A stretch of DNA of 64,000 nt from Thecamonas trahens ATCC 50062. Lineage: Eukaryota > Protista > Apusomonadida. The stretch spans positions 68,735-132,734 of the forward strand of contig NW_013657619.1 in NCBI RefSeq assembly GCF_000142905.1, read 5' to 3'. Within the stretch, counting starts at the first letter, position 1; each line of letters begins with the position of its first letter. Shown here piece by piece: positions 49,639 through 54,991 of this stretch. The position numbers were made by a program, and so were the translations under genes. The notes under the pieces were generated by a model, which saw nothing but the letters and a program-made list of their open reading frames with translations, was not told the origin of the DNA and made no database searches.

Positions 49639-50690
49639 TTACCGCCCCGCCTCGTCGGCAAACCGGACGCGGCCACGCCGCGCGCGCTGGCTGCCTCCCA
49701 CTCGCGCTGTCACCCTCAGCCCATTGCCGCGAATCTCCACCCGCCGCCCACCACCGCTGCCGATCGCGCGACCGCGCCGCGCCTCGGCTCGCTCCAGTGA
49801 GAACAGGCCTGGCGGCCGGAGGTTCGGGTCGAACAGGCCCGGCCCGAGCGTGCCGTCGCACAGCTTGCGCCGCCGCTGCCCCGATGCCTCGGCACGTACC
49901 ACGCGCATCCGTGTCCCGTCGTTCCCTGCGCGGACGTGGATCACCAGCTTGGCCGCTGGTCCATCCGCCGAGCTCCCTGGCCGCAGCAGTCCCGACATCG
50001 ACTGCCGCAGCTGGTCGAGCGACGAGACCGACGACAAGGAGTCGACCGACGCCTGTGCTTCGAGCCTGTCACGCCGTAAACTAGATGTGCTATCGGGGAC
50101 AGCCTCCAGCTCGGCCTCTATCTCGAGACGTGCCGCCACCTCGGCCCGGAGCTCCGACTCAACCTGCTGCCTCGCGATCACCTCGTTCTTCAGCCGCAGC
50201 CGCAGCTCCGCAATCTCTGCCCGGCAAGCCGCGTGCCCGTCGCTGCCTCTATCTATCGGGAGGTCCAGCTCCTGCTGCGACTGTGCCAGCGACGCCTCGG
50301 CCTTGGCGATCACTTCAGATATCCGCGATGAGACCCGGAGGCTCTCAGACTCGACGAGCTGCGACAGTCGCATGCTCGCAGAGCCGTCGGCGTTGCCATC
50401 TCCGGCCTCGGTCTCGGGTGCGACTAGCGGCCCCGCATACGCGTGCAGCTGCGCCAAATACGGCGATGCAGACCCATCCCATGATCCAAGGTCCATCGAT
50501 AGTCCCCGCAGTGCGTCCATCAGCGAGAGCGCCGCCTCGTCCGAGTCATCGTCCTCTGCCGCATGCTGACGCTGCAGACTGTCGGCCAGCGGCGAGACCA
50601 TCGCTGACGACACCAGTTCCATCGCCGGTGACGCCGAACGCTGCCGTCTGCGCACCAACGCGGGCATCATTGCCCCGCCGCTCGCCGACC

Positions 50691-50734
<44 letters not shown>

Positions 50735-51276
50735 AGCACGCCCCTCCCAACACTTGCCGCCGCCACAGCCTGCATGCCCTGCTGGACCTCCATCGCGCGC
50801 GCGACGTGCATTACCCTTGCCTGCATCACACCGCCATCATCATTACCGTTGCTCTCCCCGCCGTTGACGATCGCCACGGTGTCGGAACCACGACCTCCAT
50901 GACTGCCACCGCCGCCGCCGCCCCCAGCACCTGCCACTGCTGCTGCTGCTGCTGCTGCTGCTGCACCACTCCGCCGCCCCATCAGCGATGACTGCCACAA
51001 CTCGTCACCACGCTCGCCACCACTTCCGCTTCTGCTTCCGCTTCCGCCCAGTCTGGCACCGTGCCTTCTTTGCCGGTTGGCCTTCTTCCGCAGCGCATAG
51101 TGCGCCGTCAGGGCAGCCGACCGCGCCCGACGAGGCTCCCACGACGCGCTTGGGGAGACAGGCGCGGGGTGCACAGGCTGCGGAGTGGCCGACGGCGCAG
51201 GCCCTCGCTGCCCAAGCCAAGCCTGTCGTCGACCATCTCGCCGTGCTTCTCCCTCGCGCCGCCTTTGTCTACGCAT
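49639..51276 (-). CDS. Hypothetical low-complexity/coiled-coil protein
   Basis: Long ORF with poly-A, poly-G and (GS)n tracts and a short coiled coil (RAEIAELRLRLKNEVIARQQVESELRAE). The start is uncertain. Confidence 0.5.
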
Positions 51277-51436
51277 CCTCCGCAAAGCCAAGTCTGGCGC
51301 CAAAGCCAGCGTCAGGGCTGAGCCCGCCAGCGCTCGCCCGCCTCGGCGCCAAAGGCCGGCACGCCGTCGTGCTCACCACACAATTCAATCGCGGCTATCG
51401 GTGTGACTGGACGCTAGTCGGGAGAAGATATGGCTG

Positions 51437-54400
51437 CTACGCACGAGGCTCGATGAGGAGTGACCGGTCGTAGAGAGCGTCATCGTCGGGGTAAGCGAGT
51501 TCGGCGTCGGTGGTGCTCGCCCGGAGGAGGTTGAGGAGGTCAGGGTAGGGAACAAAGTCGTAGGTGAGCGCAGTCTGCCAGCGGACAATCTTGTGGACCA
51601 CGTGCTCGGCGACGTATGCGCCCTTACGCATGTTGATAAGCCCAGTCTCCGCGTCGATGTCTGGGTTCGCCTCGTCCATCTTGAACAGATCCTGCAGGTA
51701 CTGGCCAAGGTACGGGATAAAGGTCGGAAGCGGGTCGAGAAGCGCGGCGTCGGGCTCAAACGACCGCGGACCGGCACCGCGCGCCGGATCAAACAGCAGT
51801 GTCCGCAGCTGGTCGAGTACCGCCCGCAACTCGTCCGGAACGAGCGCCCACGACGCGTGCAGCCGCTTGATCGGTGTCGAGACTAGCGCAGAGACGACCT
51901 CCATCAGCCCGTTGGCGTTGGCCAACTCCCCCAGAGCGTGGGCCACCCGAATGTATGCCTCGAGCACGCAGGCACGCGCCTCAGGCGTCGGCTCCTCGAG
52001 CACCGCCACCTGGAACCGACGGACCATGGCGTCAAAGTGATTGATAAAGGCAAGGATGTTGGGCGCGAGCGCGTGGGCCTGCGCATGCTTCCACGCCTTG
52101 TCGAAAAACTCCTCCGGCCGGATCCGCCGGAACAGCTGCGACTCGTAGAGGCACATCTGCCGCGCCACCTCGATCGGATTTGCCGACGCCAATGACGGCG
52201 GCCCGCTCGCCACACGAGGCCGCGGCGGATCGACCACCGCCACAGGCGGCGGCCCGGCCTCGCCAAACACAAGAATCGGGTGCATGCAGTCGCCGCGGTT
52301 GTTCGCCTCCAGCAGCTCCAAAAGATATTCGGCCTCGGCGACCATCCCCATCCGCGGAAGCAAGACTCCACACAGCGTCCGCAGCAGCTCTGCCGGTTCC
52401 GGATCGGTGCCAAAGTCGACGTGCGAGAGCGCGAGCCATCGCTTGAGAACGTAGACAACACGCGCAAGGCCCCAGCTTGCCGCAGATGGTGCAGCAAGCG
52501 ACGCAAACGGATCATCCGCCCCGTGCGCTTCCGCCAGCCGACAGAGCCGGACCATTGCCGCCTCCATCAGCTGCGTCGGCGAGAGGAACCGCCGGTACGA
52601 GACCAGGAAGGCATCGACAAAGCTGTCGTCCGGCGACGACAGCGCGTGGTAGACTAGCCCGCGGATGTTGCCCGACACCACGTGCCGCCGGGACAGCAGC
52701 CGGGAAACGGTGCCCCTGCTGTCGGTCGACGGCGGGCCGGAGCTCTCTGTGGTCACCTCAGCCGCGACCGGACACAGTCCCGGCGCCGTCCACGGCGAGT
52801 GCTCGCACCCGTCGGCGCCGAGGACGCCAACTAATGCCGCCATTTGCCCGGCGGCAGTGCCAGCCAGCTCAGGCGCCGCCATGACGTGTGCCTCGTGGAG
52901 GAGTGCCACCAGCTGCCGCTTCTCCAGATGCAGTCGCAGATTCTCCGCCGCCATGACTGCCAGTTGGTGGGCAACAAGCCTGTTGTGCTTGGCCACGTCG
53001 GCGGCGGCAACCTGCATCGAGTTGAGGACTTGGAAGAGGCCGGCCTTGGTCCGCGGCTTGCGCCGCCGCCGCCGCCGCGGCCGGCCTCCGCGCCTCCCGG
53101 CCTCCATCGCCACCACCGCAGGCATTGACGCATGCTGGCCAACAATGACCATCGAGCTAAAGTCCGAGTCGTGGCCGCCGTCACCAACATCGTCGTCGTA
53201 CGAGTACTCGTCGCCGTCGGATCGCAGCTCCAAGTCAAGCGTGCTAAAGACTTCGGTAAACGACCGCGCGCGCTGCCGCGGTGGCCTGGCGTCCAGCGAC
53301 GAGTACAACGCTGTGAGGCCCAATCTGCCACTTCCGCCGCCGACCCCGCCAGCGCCTGGCTGCGGTGCAAGCAGCGCACCCGGCGCCACTCCACGAACAA
53401 GCGCGGGCGCAAAGGCTGCCGCTCCGGTCACATGGTCCGTCAGCAGCTCCATCGTCTTGATCAGCTTGTCCCCAAGCTCTACAAGGTGATACGCATCCCA
53501 GCAAATGACTGCATTGCCGACAGCAAGAATGACCAGCACAAACAGCATGAGCACCACGTTCAGCGCAGCTTGGATCCGCAGCGTGTGCGAGACGTTGAAC
53601 CGCGCCACAGACGTGTCGGTCGTAACCGTCTCAATGAACGTGTTCCGCACCAGCCGCATGTCAAAGTCGCCGCCGAGCACCACCGTGTTGTTCACCACCA
53701 GCTGCACCGCGCGCACCGACGACGAGTACGGCTGCAGGTAGAGCGGGATGACAGATTGGAGCGCATGCTGCGGATCCAGCTGCCACGCGCCCTCAACCGC
53801 ATTGAGCCCGGCCTGTGCATGCGGCTGCCACTCGAGCGGCCATTGGAGGAGAGTCGCCGCAATAAAGAGGAGGAGCACAAGCGCAGTCACCTTGTTGGTC
53901 GTCGATTGGATGATGACCTCGCCAAACCGGAACGACGGCGGGCCTGGTTTGCTCGGCGACGTTGCGGCCTGCTTGGTCGGCAGCGCAAAGAACGAGGTGT
54001 TCATCCCGACAGCCTCGTCACCAGCGCCCGGCACCGCTTCGTCGAGCGCGTCCACTGGGTGTGGCTGCTGCTTGACGATCTTCTCGATACGAACCAGTGT
54101 GAGCAGCCGTGCTGCCCGCGCAGACACCCGCGCCTCCCGCCCAGCCTTGGCCAGCTTGAACGACGCCGACGAGAGCAAGTCGACGCCAAACAGCGCCGCA
54201 AAGTCGGGCGCAAACGAGAGTAGAGTCACTGCATCGAGGATGAAAAAGAACGAGGTGAGGTACTCGCGCCCGCGCACAATCGCCGTCACCGCCATCTCTA
54301 CCACAAACATGACAAAAACAACAAGCTTGAGCAGGAGAAGGAAGAACGGAAGATTGGCATCTCGCGGATCCGGCAGCTCGGCCAGCACCTCGATGTTGTC

Positions 54401-54991
54401 CACAAAGATAACGTAGATGGTGCCCATAATAATGGCCCAACGGAAGCCTGTCGACGCCAGAATCCTATCCGGTATGCTGAGCCACCACTGCAGACGGGCG
54501 TCGTCATCATCATCGTCATCATCATCGCCATGATCATCAGCGTCAGCACCAGCCAAGCCGCCATCTAAACCAGCACTTTCCATTCCATAGTGCATGAGCA
54601 ACGGCATGCGCTCGCCAGCAATGGTCGACCGCGGCGACGGCAGCGATGAGAAGCTCGACCGCAGGTCAAGAGCGGGCATGGACTTGGGCATGACCGGAAA
54701 CGACAGAAACGATTGCACATCAAGAGCACCGGTACCAGCATCCTGCCCGACCCCTCCATGCGCATGTGCCCCGTCAGCTCTACTCTCCTCAGCCCCGCCA
54801 TCGCCAGCCCTGCCATCGCCAGCCCTGCCATCGCCAGCCCTGCCATCGCCAGCCCTGCCATCGCCATGCTCTTCGCCTGCGAGCCATGTCGTCGACCCGT
54901 CACGCGGAGACTCTGCGGTGGTGAAGGACGAGCTCGAGGAGAGCAGCAGGGAAGCAGGGACCACACCTGCTCCTGCTGCGTTGATGGACAT
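51437..54991 (-). CDS. Voltage-sensor-like 6TM domain fused to a Ras guanine nucleotide exchange factor (REM + CDC25)
   Basis: S1 TIYVIFVDNI, S2 FVVEM, S3 YLTSFFFILD, S4 KLAKAGREARVSARAARLLTLVRIEK, then two further TMs. REM: FVDAFLVSYRRFLSP...RVVYVLKRW. CDC25: EVARQMCL...APNI..FI..F...N.NGLMEVVSAL.S.PIKRL..SW...IPYLG.YLQDL..MDEANPD...GLINM.K. Confidence 0.92.
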   Translation of the reverse strand: MSINAAGAGVVPASLLLSSSSSFTTAESPRDGSTTWLAGEEHGDGRAGDGRAGDGRAGDGRAGDGGAEESRADGAHAHGGVGQDAGTGALDVQSFLSFPVMPKSMPALDLRSSFSSLPSPRSTIAGERMPLLMHYGMESAGLDGGLAGADADDHGDDDDDDDDDARLQWWLSIPDRILASTGFRWAIIMGTIYVIFVDNIEVLAELPDPRDANLPFFLLLLKLVVFVMFVVEMAVTAIVRGREYLTSFFFILDAVTLLSFAPDFAALFGVDLLSSASFKLAKAGREARVSARAARLLTLVRIEKIVKQQPHPVDALDEAVPGAGDEAVGMNTSFFALPTKQAATSPSKPGPPSFRFGEVIIQSTTNKVTALVLLLFIAATLLQWPLEWQPHAQAGLNAVEGAWQLDPQHALQSVIPLYLQPYSSSVRAVQLVVNNTVVLGGDFDMRLVRNTFIETVTTDTSVARFNVSHTLRIQAALNVVLMLFVLVILAVGNAVICWDAYHLVELGDKLIKTMELLTDHVTGAAAFAPALVRGVAPGALLAPQPGAGGVGGGSGRLGLTALYSSLDARPPRQRARSFTEVFSTLDLELRSDGDEYSYDDDVGDGGHDSDFSSMVIVGQHASMPAVVAMEAGRRGGRPRRRRRRKPRTKAGLFQVLNSMQVAAADVAKHNRLVAHQLAVMAAENLRLHLEKRQLVALLHEAHVMAAPELAGTAAGQMAALVGVLGADGCEHSPWTAPGLCPVAAEVTTESSGPPSTDSRGTVSRLLSRRHVVSGNIRGLVYHALSSPDDSFVDAFLVSYRRFLSPTQLMEAAMVRLCRLAEAHGADDPFASLAAPSAASWGLARVVYVLKRWLALSHVDFGTDPEPAELLRTLCGVLLPRMGMVAEAEYLLELLEANNRGDCMHPILVFGEAGPPPVAVVDPPRPRVASGPPSLASANPIEVARQMCLYESQLFRRIRPEEFFDKAWKHAQAHALAPNILAFINHFDAMVRRFQVAVLEEPTPEARACVLEAYIRVAHALGELANANGLMEVVSALVSTPIKRLHASWALVPDELRAVLDQLRTLLFDPARGAGPRSFEPDAALLDPLPTFIPYLGQYLQDLFKMDEANPDIDAETGLINMRKGAYVAEHVVHKIVRWQTALTYDFVPYPDLLNLLRASTTDAELAYPDDDALYDRSLLIEPRA
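54797..54866 (+). repeat. 15-bp tandem repeat (GCCATCGCCAGCCCT) x ~4.7, encoding (GDGRA)n in the RasGEF N-terminus
   Basis: Directly visible. Confidence 0.9.

What the first reader, a model, noticed from the sequence alone, without database searches (positions are those of the whole stretch)
51437..54991. Candidate voltage-sensing RasGEF
Seen in one uninterrupted ORF: S1-S3 with acidic counter-charges (D in IFVDN, E in FVVEM, D in FFILD); an S4 with basic residues about every third position (K..K..R..R...R..R.....R..K); two more TMs around an outer loop ending AALNVV...WDAYHLV; no GYG-type pore motif; then a complete REM+CDC25 RasGEF. Known: this 6TM signature (TIYxxFxDD, SFFFxLD, RAxRxxRAAR, TTxxVxxLVL, AxLNI...DAxxLV) is, as I recall it, that of the channel-like adenylyl cyclases of Paramecium, Plasmodium and some algae. 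Voltage sensors are known to drive enzymes in voltage-sensing phosphatases. Inference: a direct membrane-potential-to-Ras transducer. I know of no described example, and it could also serve as an electrogenetic tool.
Basis: partly seen in the sequence, partly recalled or inferred. Interest (0 to 1): 0.92.

Follow-up and report, generated by a model that had tools for sequence, protein, structure and literature searches.

The report
Voltage-sensor-type membrane module fused to RasGEF
One intact gene of the marine flagellate Thecamonas trahens joins a true relative of the ion-channel voltage sensor, without an ion pore, to a Ras-activating enzyme, so membrane voltage may switch Ras on directly, though nobody has tested this.

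Summary

- **Ras-activating half:** residues 771-1183 are a complete REM+CDC25 RasGEF (Pfam E 1.8e-38; SOS1 E 5e-28).
- **Sensor residues:** F229/E232 (S2), D253 (S3) and eight basic S4 residues are in place.
- **No pore:** S5 and S6 flank an ~80-aa extracellular alpha/beta domain. There is no pore-domain fold and no GYG-like motif.

The six-helix module belongs to a broad eukaryotic family. It is also fused to ciliate and apicomplexan ACalpha-type cyclases, phosphodiesterases, RGS domains and RhoGEFs. Thecamonas has about six VSD-RasGEF genes, and Lithocolla and dictyostelids have them too.

Voltage control of the GEF is inferred, not shown. The ~250-aa S6-to-REM linker is poorly conserved, which argues against tight mechanical coupling.

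I found no paper describing a VSD-RasGEF, but Pfam 38.1 already catalogues part of the module (PF26726, "Helical_RasGEFs"). This scan had already flagged paralogues on other pieces of the same genome.

Verdict: a new variant of the known voltage-sensor-enzyme kind, and high interest.

The parts
51437..54991 (-). Whole ORF, 1184 aa (stop included)
   Evidence: An estuary-metagenome DNA contig covers 52509-54005 without gaps.
54500..54991 (-). N-terminal low-complexity extension (aa 1-164), with a GDGRA x4 repeat and a poly-Asp run. The true start codon is uncertain (Met at 1, 101, 105, 129, 133, 137).
   Evidence: The repeat number differs in L002/P0002.
54074..54499 (-). Voltage-sensor domain: S0 helix plus S1-S4 (aa 165-306). 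Key residues are D198 (S1), K222, F229 and E232 (S2), D253 and D263 (S3), and S4 K279/K282/R285/R288/R292/R295/R301/K304.
53930..54073 (-). S4-S5 linker (aa 307-354), predicted disordered and variable in length
   Evidence: pLDDT below 50 at model residues 158-185; alignment A1.
53837..53929 (-). Pre-S5 helix and S5 (aa 355-385), with the conserved TTNKV motif
53591..53836 (-). Extracellular alpha/beta domain between S5 and S6 (aa 386-467): two helices plus four strands, two N-glycosylation sequons, conserved R449/E454
   Evidence: AF2 pLDDT 92. No pore-domain match. Sequons.
53450..53590 (-). S6 and its cytoplasmic extension helix (aa 468-514), conserved across RasGEF-, RhoGEF- and cyclase-fused relatives
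   Evidence: One helix at 304-350 of model 1; alignment blocks.
52682..53449 (-). Linker of about 250 aa (aa 515-770): low complexity, a poly-Arg tract (aa 639-645), and a helix-prone segment at about 649-700. Poorly conserved.
   Evidence: (the poly-Arg tract attracts unrelated contigs).
52385..52681 (-). REM (RasGEF_N) domain, aa 771-869
   Evidence: Pfam E 2.7e-8; SOS1 alignment.
51443..52171 (-). CDC25-homology RasGEF catalytic domain (Pfam 941-1123; the SOS1 alignment runs to aa 1183). Helical-hairpin motif at 1092-1111, with F1103 and E1107 aligned to SOS1 L938 and E942.
   Evidence: Pfam E 1.8e-38; SOS1 E 5e-28.

Best explanation
This is one real gene of Thecamonas trahens. It encodes a membrane-embedded Ras/Rap exchange factor.

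Shown here:
- The N-terminal half is a pore-less six-helix sensor module. It has a genuine S1-S4 voltage-sensor-domain homologue, then an S5 / folded ectodomain / S6 hairpin, then a conserved post-S6 cytoplasmic helix.
- The C-terminal half is a complete, apparently catalytically competent REM+CDC25 RasGEF on the cytoplasmic side.
- The same module is an input device across eukaryotes. It is fused to class III cyclases (ciliate and apicomplexan ACalpha type), phosphodiesterases, RGS domains, RhoGEFs and RasGEFs.

Inferred mechanism:
- S4 moves with membrane potential.
- The movement is passed through the pre-S5 helix, S5/S6 and the post-S6 helix.
- This changes the orientation, oligomeric state or autoinhibition of the REM-CDC25 unit next to membrane-bound Ras/Rap.
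- Ras-GTP production would then follow membrane potential, possibly integrated with a cue read by the ectodomain.
For: Single ORF. It is continuous in an independent environmental DNA contig.

The architecture is conserved:
- A 63-69% identical metagenomic orthologue, P0001, has it.
- So do about five further paralogues in the same genome.
- So do single transcripts of Lithocolla and Ceratiomyxa and genes of dictyostelids.

VSD homology:
- Profile hits to Hv1 (E 5e-6), Cav1.2, Nav and Shaker sensors.
- AF2 model pLDDT 83 and pTM 0.74.
- F229-x-x-E232 and D253 are nearly invariant in the family.
- The S4 'aRagRaaR' stretch aligns with Hv1 R1-R3.

Effectors and output:
- The effector diversity fits a generic input module: cyclase 21, PDE 3, RGS 3, RasGEF 3 and RhoGEF 2 among 49 further hits.
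- The post-S6 helix is conserved whatever the effector.

Substrate and catalysis:
- The GEF hairpin residues are kept.
- The genome encodes at least 7 Ras/Rap-type GTPases with the YDPTIEDSY switch I.

Precedent from the literature: cAMP synthesis in Paramecium responds to hyperpolarisation and is ascribed to a cyclase of this module family (PMC10651576, PMC12414865).
Against: - No functional data exist for any RasGEF member.
- The S6-to-REM linker is about 250 aa, low in complexity and poorly conserved. This is hard to reconcile with rigid allosteric coupling.
- The Pfam Ion_trans score is just under the curated cut-off (23.6 versus 25 bits).
- S4 has a register break (R288 to R292), an acidic residue (E286) and T298 where the family consensus has Arg.
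- The GEF clade carries a conserved Lys (K222) in outer S2, where classical sensors often have an acid.
- Membrane anchoring alone is a known way to activate a RasGEF, so the module need not regulate anything.
- Evidence of transcription is limited to short metatranscriptome contigs.
Confidence: 0.45

Rival explanations
1. Anchor only. The six-helix module is a degenerate, voltage-insensitive VSD-like fold, as S1-S4 is in TRP channels. It only holds the GEF at the right membrane. Activity is set by expression, phosphorylation of the long linker, or partner proteins.
For: The long, low-complexity, poorly conserved linker. Thecamonas has about 65 RasGEF-domain matches, so many may differ mainly in localisation. 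Some relatives have eroded S4 segments, for example P0038/P0096 with 4-5 basic residues. Dictyostelium RasGEFW is described only as plasma-membrane localised through a TM domain (PMC11696275).
Against: The charge-transfer-centre residues and 6-8 S4 charges are conserved across distant eukaryotes and across unrelated effector enzymes. That is unnecessary for a mere anchor. The post-S6 helix is conserved independently of the effector.
Confidence: 0.25
2. Ligand receptor. The folded ectodomain between S5 and S6 binds an extracellular ligand, like a two-TM periplasmic sensor of bacterial kinases and chemoreceptors. It signals through S6 and its extension, and the VSD is a structural scaffold or a modulator.
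For: The ectodomain is confidently folded (pLDDT 92). It is conserved, with near-invariant Arg/Glu. The output helix continues directly from S6. There are weak structural neighbours among CqsR and CpxA sensor domains, and among Cache/HAMP/histidine-kinase/MCP clusters for the paralogue P0005 (TM 0.35-0.39).
Against: Those structural matches are not significant. The domain is small (~80 aa) and no pocket was examined. This reading does not explain the conserved S4 charges and the F/E/D centre.
Confidence: 0.15
3. Channel-enzyme. The module itself conducts ions, either through an oligomeric S5-S6 assembly or through the VSD (Hv1-like or omega current), as proposed for the Paramecium cyclase. The GEF responds to the flux.
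For: The literature ascribes a K+ conductance to the Paramecium cyclase (PMC12414865, PMC10651576). The best sequence-profile hit is Hv1.
Against: There is no pore helix or selectivity-filter fold, and no channel pore domains appear among the 50 best matches of the S5-S6 model. The ORF has no G[YFLM]G. The cytoplasmic GFG motif of the cyclase relatives is absent from the RasGEF branch.
Confidence: 0.08
4. Artefact. Two neighbouring genes (a small membrane protein and a RasGEF) were read as one ORF.
For: A public 568-aa gene call (P0002) stops at residue ~577.
Against: P0002 comes from a 1.7x-coverage contig whose last 59 nt match nothing in the window, so the contig end is chimeric. An independent DNA contig spans that point without a gap. 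The fused architecture recurs in paralogues, orthologues and transcriptome-derived ORFs.
Confidence: 0.02

Closest known systems
Channel-like adenylyl cyclases of ciliates and apicomplexans (Paramecium/Tetrahymena AC, Plasmodium ACalpha; Weber et al. 2004, cited in PMC10651576) and the Phytophthora VSD-cyclases (PMC12223298)
   Same: The same six-helix module and the same motifs (TxYxLFxDD, F..E, SFFFWLD, ARAGRAAR..R, TTxKV, DAxxLV plus the post-S6 helix). The window's TM domain finds cyclase-fused proteins directly. A cyclase-fused hit of the window's TM domain (P0014) in turn finds Tetrahymena, Stentor, Perkinsus, Chromera and green-algal cyclases by its TM domain. Apicomplexan 'adenylyl cyclase alpha' is a structural neighbour of the paralogue's module (TM 0.70).
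   Different: The effector is REM+CDC25, not a class III cyclase. The GEF-coupled modules form their own clade. They lack the cytoplasmic GFG motif and have a much longer, unconserved linker.
Voltage-sensing phosphatases (Ci-VSP / TPTE)
   Different: VSPs have four helices, and the enzyme is joined to S4 by a short linker. Here there are two extra helices and an ectodomain, and the enzyme follows S6. There is no phosphatase and no sequence-level orthology.
Pfam PF26726 'Helical_RasGEFs' (Pfam 38.1) and Dictyostelium RasGEFW
   Same: PF26726 is precomputed on the dictyostelid RasGEFs, cyclases and PDEs that carry this module. RasGEFW is reported as a RasGEF with a TM domain at the plasma membrane (PMC11696275).
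   Different: PF26726 was not in the local Pfam copy, so the window protein could not be scored. Its orthologue P0001 has no precomputed PF26726 hit. I could not verify that RasGEFW is the dictyostelid member. Neither source interprets the module as a voltage sensor.
SOS1 / RasGRF-type REM+CDC25 exchange factors
   Same: Full REM+CDC25 alignment to SOS1 (E 5e-28, aa 776-1183), with the helical-hairpin residues kept.
   Different: No DH-PH, histone-fold or proline-rich regions. It is an integral membrane protein, not a recruited one.
Other VSD-coupled non-channel proteins: Hv1 and SLC9C1 (sperm Na+/H+ exchanger)
   Same: A VSD used outside a classical pore. Both appear among sequence or structure matches.
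   Different: The output differs (proton path, transporter). No relationship beyond the VSD.

Membership tests
Voltage-sensor domain superfamily (S1-S4 of Ion_trans) | Four-helix S1-S4 bundle fold | tested here: met
Voltage-sensor domain superfamily (S1-S4 of Ion_trans) | S4 with basic residues at every third position | tested here: met
   K279, K282, R285, R288, R292, R295, R301, K304. There is one register break, at 288 to 292. The pattern is conserved in the family.
Voltage-sensor domain superfamily (S1-S4 of Ion_trans) | Charge-transfer centre: aromatic plus acid in S2, and an acid in S3 | tested here: met
   F229-x-x-E232 and D253 are nearly invariant or invariant columns. The positions come from alignment, not from coordinates.
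Voltage-sensor domain superfamily (S1-S4 of Ion_trans) | Pfam Ion_trans at or above the curated cut-off | tested here: not met
   23.6 bits against a cut-off of 25, and only profile positions 9-111 of 241. Homology rests on the family profile and the fold.
Voltage-sensor domain superfamily (S1-S4 of Ion_trans) | Voltage-dependent charge movement | not testable with these tools
   Needs electrophysiology.
Voltage-gated P-loop cation channels | Pore helix and selectivity filter between S5 and S6 | tested here: not met
   The S5-S6 loop is a 2-helix plus 4-strand domain. There is no channel pore among the 50 best VIA rows or among Foldseek rows, and no G[YFLM]G motif.
ACalpha-type channel-like sensor module (PF26726-bearing family) | Shared 6TM signature and significant sequence similarity to cyclase-fused members | tested here: met
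   Cyclase-fused P0014, P0015 and P0023 are hit at E 3e-11 to 7e-9 over the whole module. Consensus motifs; tree.
ACalpha-type channel-like sensor module (PF26726-bearing family) | Match to Pfam PF26726 itself | not testable with these tools
   The family is absent from the local Pfam library. It is precomputed on relatives but not on the orthologue P0001.
CDC25-family RasGEF | REM and CDC25-homology domains above Pfam cut-offs | tested here: met
   RasGEF 132.7 bits (cut-off 23.1); RasGEF_N 34.4 bits (cut-off 28.3).
CDC25-family RasGEF | Helical-hairpin residues that open the nucleotide site (SOS1 L938, E942) | tested here: met
   They align with F1103 (hydrophobic retained) and E1107. The SOS1 numbering is from my own knowledge.
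CDC25-family RasGEF | Exchange activity on a Ras/Rap GTPase | not testable with these tools
   Candidate substrates exist in the genome.
Voltage-sensing phosphatase (VSP) | PTEN-like phosphatase joined to S4 by a short linker | tested here: not met
   No phosphatase domain. The enzyme follows S6 after about 250 aa.

The most novel reading that the evidence does not exclude
Membrane potential directly gates Ras activation. S4 movement in this pore-less sensor switches the attached REM-CDC25 on or off. That would make it a new class of voltage-regulated enzyme. It would also be one arm of a pan-eukaryotic system in which the same sensor module drives cyclases, phosphodiesterases, RGS proteins, RhoGEFs and RasGEFs, a plausible molecular basis for electrically guided motility in protists.
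Probability: 0.35. Interest if true: 0.9.

Novelty: new variant of a known kind. Interest (0 to 1): 0.78.

Why it matters
Only a few enzyme or transporter classes are known or proposed to be driven by a voltage sensor: the voltage-sensing phosphatases, the sperm Na+/H+ exchanger SLC9C1, and the still uncharacterised protist cyclases. A voltage-controlled RasGEF would link electrical signalling directly to small-GTPase control of motility, polarity and growth.

The same module sits on cyclases, PDEs, RGS domains, RhoGEFs and RasGEFs from ciliates to amoebae and apusomonads. This suggests a general, unstudied input device, broader than the 'stramenopile/alveolate' or 'protozoan cyclase' range stated in the literature (PMC12223298, PMC12414865).

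Dictyostelid members make the question testable in a genetic model that is also used for electrotaxis. A compact, pore-less voltage-to-Ras switch would also be a candidate electrogenetic tool.

Tried and rejected
- **Split-gene reading:** rejected. P0002/L002 is a 1.7x-coverage contig with an unrelated 59-nt tail and no splice-like junction.
- **Pore-domain reading:** rejected for the classical P-loop. I folded S5-S6 alone and searched two ways.
- **First word-indexed homologue search:** it found only one relative. The exhaustive HMMER search was needed.
- **Atlas search with the window's own TM piece:** not possible. The paralogue P0005 was used instead.
- **Pfam PF26726:** it could not be scanned locally.
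- **Weber et al. 2004:** not held in the library. What I say about its 'displaced pore loop' is from memory.
- **Literature searches** for a VSD-RasGEF description: none found.
- **Expression:** only short metatranscriptome contigs, 100% identical or nearly so, at 52520-52689, 53506-53778, 54225-54375 and 54797-54859. DNA carry-over cannot be excluded, and no contig bridges the two halves in RNA.
Full report
**Observation.** The window carries a single open reading frame of 1184 codons at 51437-54991 on the minus strand. A hydropathy scan finds helices at about 183-205, 215-238 and 246-268, the amphipathic S4 at 276-304, then 362-385 and 476-500.
- D198 in 'IFVDN', F229/E232 in 'MFVVEM' and D253 in 'FFILD'.
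- S4 basic residues K279, K282, R285, R288, R292, R295, R301 and K304.
- 'AALNVV...WDAYHLV' in the last helix.

No G[YFLM]G motif occurs anywhere in the ORF. Pfam finds RasGEF (941-1123, E 1.8e-38), RasGEF_N (771-869, E 2.7e-8) and a sub-threshold Ion_trans match to the S1-S4 part only (192-308, 23.6 bits against a cut-off of 25). SOS1 catalytic-region chains align over residues 776-1183 at E 5e-28. In that alignment the helical-hairpin positions that open the nucleotide site of Ras (SOS1 L938 and E942, numbering from my own knowledge) correspond to F1103 and E1107. The exchange domain therefore looks competent.

**One gene, not two.** A public 568-aa gene call (P0002) that is 99% identical stops near residue 577. 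It comes from a 1,981-nt contig at 1.7x coverage. Its last 59 nt match nothing in the window, and the junction has no splice-like features. An estuary-metagenome DNA contig covers 52509-54005 without a gap. The fused architecture also recurs widely:
- in a 63-69% identical metagenomic orthologue, P0001;
- in other genes of the same genome;
- in transcriptome-derived complete ORFs of Lithocolla globosa and Ceratiomyxa fruticulosa;
- in dictyostelid genomes.

Seawater metatranscriptomes hold short contigs, identical or nearly so, in the N-terminal region, in the TM module and in the REM region. This is a weak sign of transcription. No RNA contig bridges the two halves, and DNA carry-over cannot be excluded.

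**Organism.** Two homologues (KNC51693.1 and AMSG_06962 of Thecamonas trahens ATCC 50062) lie on contigs of 357,088 and 401,146 bases. These are exactly the lengths of contigs C37 and C32 of the window's own assembly, where my genome search had placed paralogues. So the window is from Thecamonas trahens, a marine gliding flagellate (Apusomonadida). That agrees with the marine and estuarine runs that hold the stretch.

**The S1-S4 part is a real voltage-sensor-domain homologue.**
- The TM part alone (aa 165-515) finds 255 proteins at E<=1e-3 in an exhaustive HMMER search.
- A profile of short, module-only relatives hits the sequences of solved voltage sensors and almost nothing else: Hv1 (E 5e-6), Cav1.2 repeat IV, insect and human Nav repeats, Shaker and HCN. 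The family's 'aRagRaaR' stretch is laid on Hv1's three S4 arginines.
- An AlphaFold2 model built with 30 homologues has mean pLDDT 83 and pTM 0.74.
- Foldseek gives weak E-values, but its rows are nearly all Kv, Nav or CatSper.
- The family's nearly invariant columns are the aromatic and acidic residues of S2 (F229, E232), the S3 aspartate (D253), a second S3 aspartate (D263) and an S4 arginine (R295). This is the pattern of the charge-transfer centre of classical sensors.

The window's copy is well preserved. It scores third among the paralogues against the family profile. Its departures from the family consensus are E286 inside S4, T298 in place of an arginine, and N199 in place of the second S1 aspartate. 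The whole GEF-coupled clade also carries a conserved lysine in outer S2 (K222), which cyclase-coupled relatives lack. I cannot explain that lysine.

**The module is a widespread input device.** Relatives of the six-helix module carry many different effectors:
- REM+RasGEF (one with EF-hands);
- class III cyclase domains (the majority);
- cyclic-nucleotide phosphodiesterase;
- RGS;
- RhoGEF-PH;
- GAF;
- or only SH3.

Named cyclase members come from Tetrahymena, Stentor, Blepharisma, Stylonychia, Perkinsus, Chromera and green algae. An Atlas cluster named 'adenylyl cyclase alpha, putative', mostly apicomplexan, is a structural neighbour of the paralogue's module at TM 0.70. The literature treats those cyclases as voltage-sensor/channel-enzyme fusions that should explain hyperpolarisation-induced cAMP in Paramecium, still without recombinant characterisation (PMC10651576). 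It also regards them as restricted to protozoans (PMC12414865), or the VSD-cyclase family as restricted to stramenopiles and alveolates (PMC12223298). The range seen here is wider:
- Apusomonadida (Thecamonas);
- Holomycota (Lithocolla);
- Pigoraptor chileana;
- Amoebozoa (dictyostelids, Ceratiomyxa);
- euglenids (Ploeotia);
- Rhodelphis.

On a maximum-likelihood tree of 89 modules, the RasGEF-, RhoGEF- and SH3-linked ones group together (SH-aLRT 90, inside a clade at 96). The window's protein sits with P0001, P0005, P0003 and P0004 (97). The tree used a quick search and has several long branches, so this is indicative only.

**Within Thecamonas.** The genome has about ten loci with the module. 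REM+RasGEF follows it in the window gene, on C18 and on C11, on C37 and C32, and very probably on C7, where a RasGEF match lies 2 kb downstream. There is also an SH3-plus-module gene (C43) and a cyclase fusion (AMSG_04530, C18). The genome holds about 65 RasGEF-domain matches. It has at least seven Ras/Rap-type GTPases with the YDPTIEDSY switch I, among them an H-Ras-like and a Rap-like one. Substrates are therefore at hand.

**How it most likely works.** The following is shown:
- a sensor of voltage-sensor type;
- no pore;
- an extracellular domain;
- a post-S6 helix whose sequence pattern is conserved whatever enzyme follows;
- a complete RasGEF on the cytoplasmic side.

The following is inferred. 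S4 moves with membrane potential. The movement reaches the post-S6 helix through the pre-S5 helix and the S5/S6 pair, a channel-like coupling path and not the S4-to-enzyme path of voltage-sensing phosphatases. This changes the access or autoinhibition of REM-CDC25 towards membrane-bound Ras/Rap.

The main argument against tight coupling is the linker from aa 515 to 770. It is about 250 residues long, partly low in complexity (including a poly-Arg tract), and barely conserved even among close relatives, although helix-prone stretches recur. Because single-domain class III cyclases must dimerise, the module probably works as a dimer. I could not test this, since the complex predictor was not available.

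I put the voltage-transducer reading at about 0.45. The rivals are a plain, voltage-insensitive membrane anchor (0.25), an ectodomain ligand receptor (0.15), a channel-enzyme (0.08) and an annotation artefact (0.02).

**Comparison with what is known, and novelty.** It works like a voltage-sensing phosphatase in principle (sensor plus enzyme, no pore), but it is not a member of that family. It is a member of the module family of ACalpha-type cyclases, carrying a different enzyme. Eight literature searches found no description of a voltage-sensor-RasGEF. A survey of Dbl RhoGEFs that covers Thecamonas does not mention membrane domains. Three things temper the novelty:
- Pfam 38.1 already has a family PF26726 named 'Helical_RasGEFs'. 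It is precomputed on the dictyostelid RasGEFs, cyclases and phosphodiesterases with this module, though not on P0001. I could not score the window protein against it.
- Dictyostelium RasGEFW is reported to have a TM domain and to sit at the plasma membrane (PMC11696275). It is probably the dictyostelid member (P0275 is from Dictyostelium cf. discoideum), but I could not verify the identity.
- This scan has already flagged paralogous genes on other pieces of the same genome, with follow-ups reaching similar conclusions.

I therefore class it as a new variant of a known kind, with high interest because the central claim is directly testable.

Noticed in passing
G000 whole genome: A 28.7-Mb genome has about 65 RasGEF-domain matches, a very large expansion. 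About six of them sit behind the voltage-sensor-type module.
   Followed up: partly
L013:2711-5179 (+) = G000:C43: A paralogue has an SH3 domain in front of the six-helix module and no recognisable enzyme behind it. Environmental relatives (P0006, P0012) look the same.
   Followed up: partly
L017:3950-6466 (+) = G000:C18; P0018 (AMSG_04530): Thecamonas also has a cyclase fused to the same module. The cyclase-type and GEF-type fusions therefore coexist outside stramenopiles and alveolates.
   Followed up: partly
window 54797-54865 (aa 43-65): A GDGRA x4 tandem peptide repeat in the N-terminal extension is one unit shorter in the 99% identical environmental contig L002. This is a length polymorphism or an assembly difference.
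   Followed up: no
window 53050-53094: The poly-Arg (CGG-rich) tract attracts many partly fitting contigs of other organisms in metagenomes and metatranscriptomes. This inflates depth there and creates false joints.
   Followed up: yes
aa K222 (window about 54326-54328) and the same column in relatives: A lysine in outer S2 is conserved in the RasGEF/RhoGEF/SH3 clade and is absent from cyclase-coupled modules. Its meaning is unknown.
   Followed up: no
Atlas neighbours of P0005: Stand-alone bacterial proteins of 337-380 aa, mostly Spirochaetota, resemble the whole six-helix module (TM 0.64; feature score 0.84). They may be prokaryotic relatives of the module.
   Followed up: no
cyclase-fused relatives P0014, P0159, P0167, P0242: A conserved cytoplasmic GFG.AG motif follows the post-S6 helix in cyclase fusions and is missing in RasGEF fusions. 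It may be what older work called a displaced pore loop (from memory, unverified).
   Followed up: partly
window 49639-51303 (-): A 554-aa ORF on the same strand lies 130 bp downstream of the RasGEF stop. It is Gly/Ser/Ala-rich with a coiled-coil-like tail. I did not examine it. The RasGEF alignment to SOS1 ends at the stop codon, so I treated it as a separate gene.
   Followed up: no
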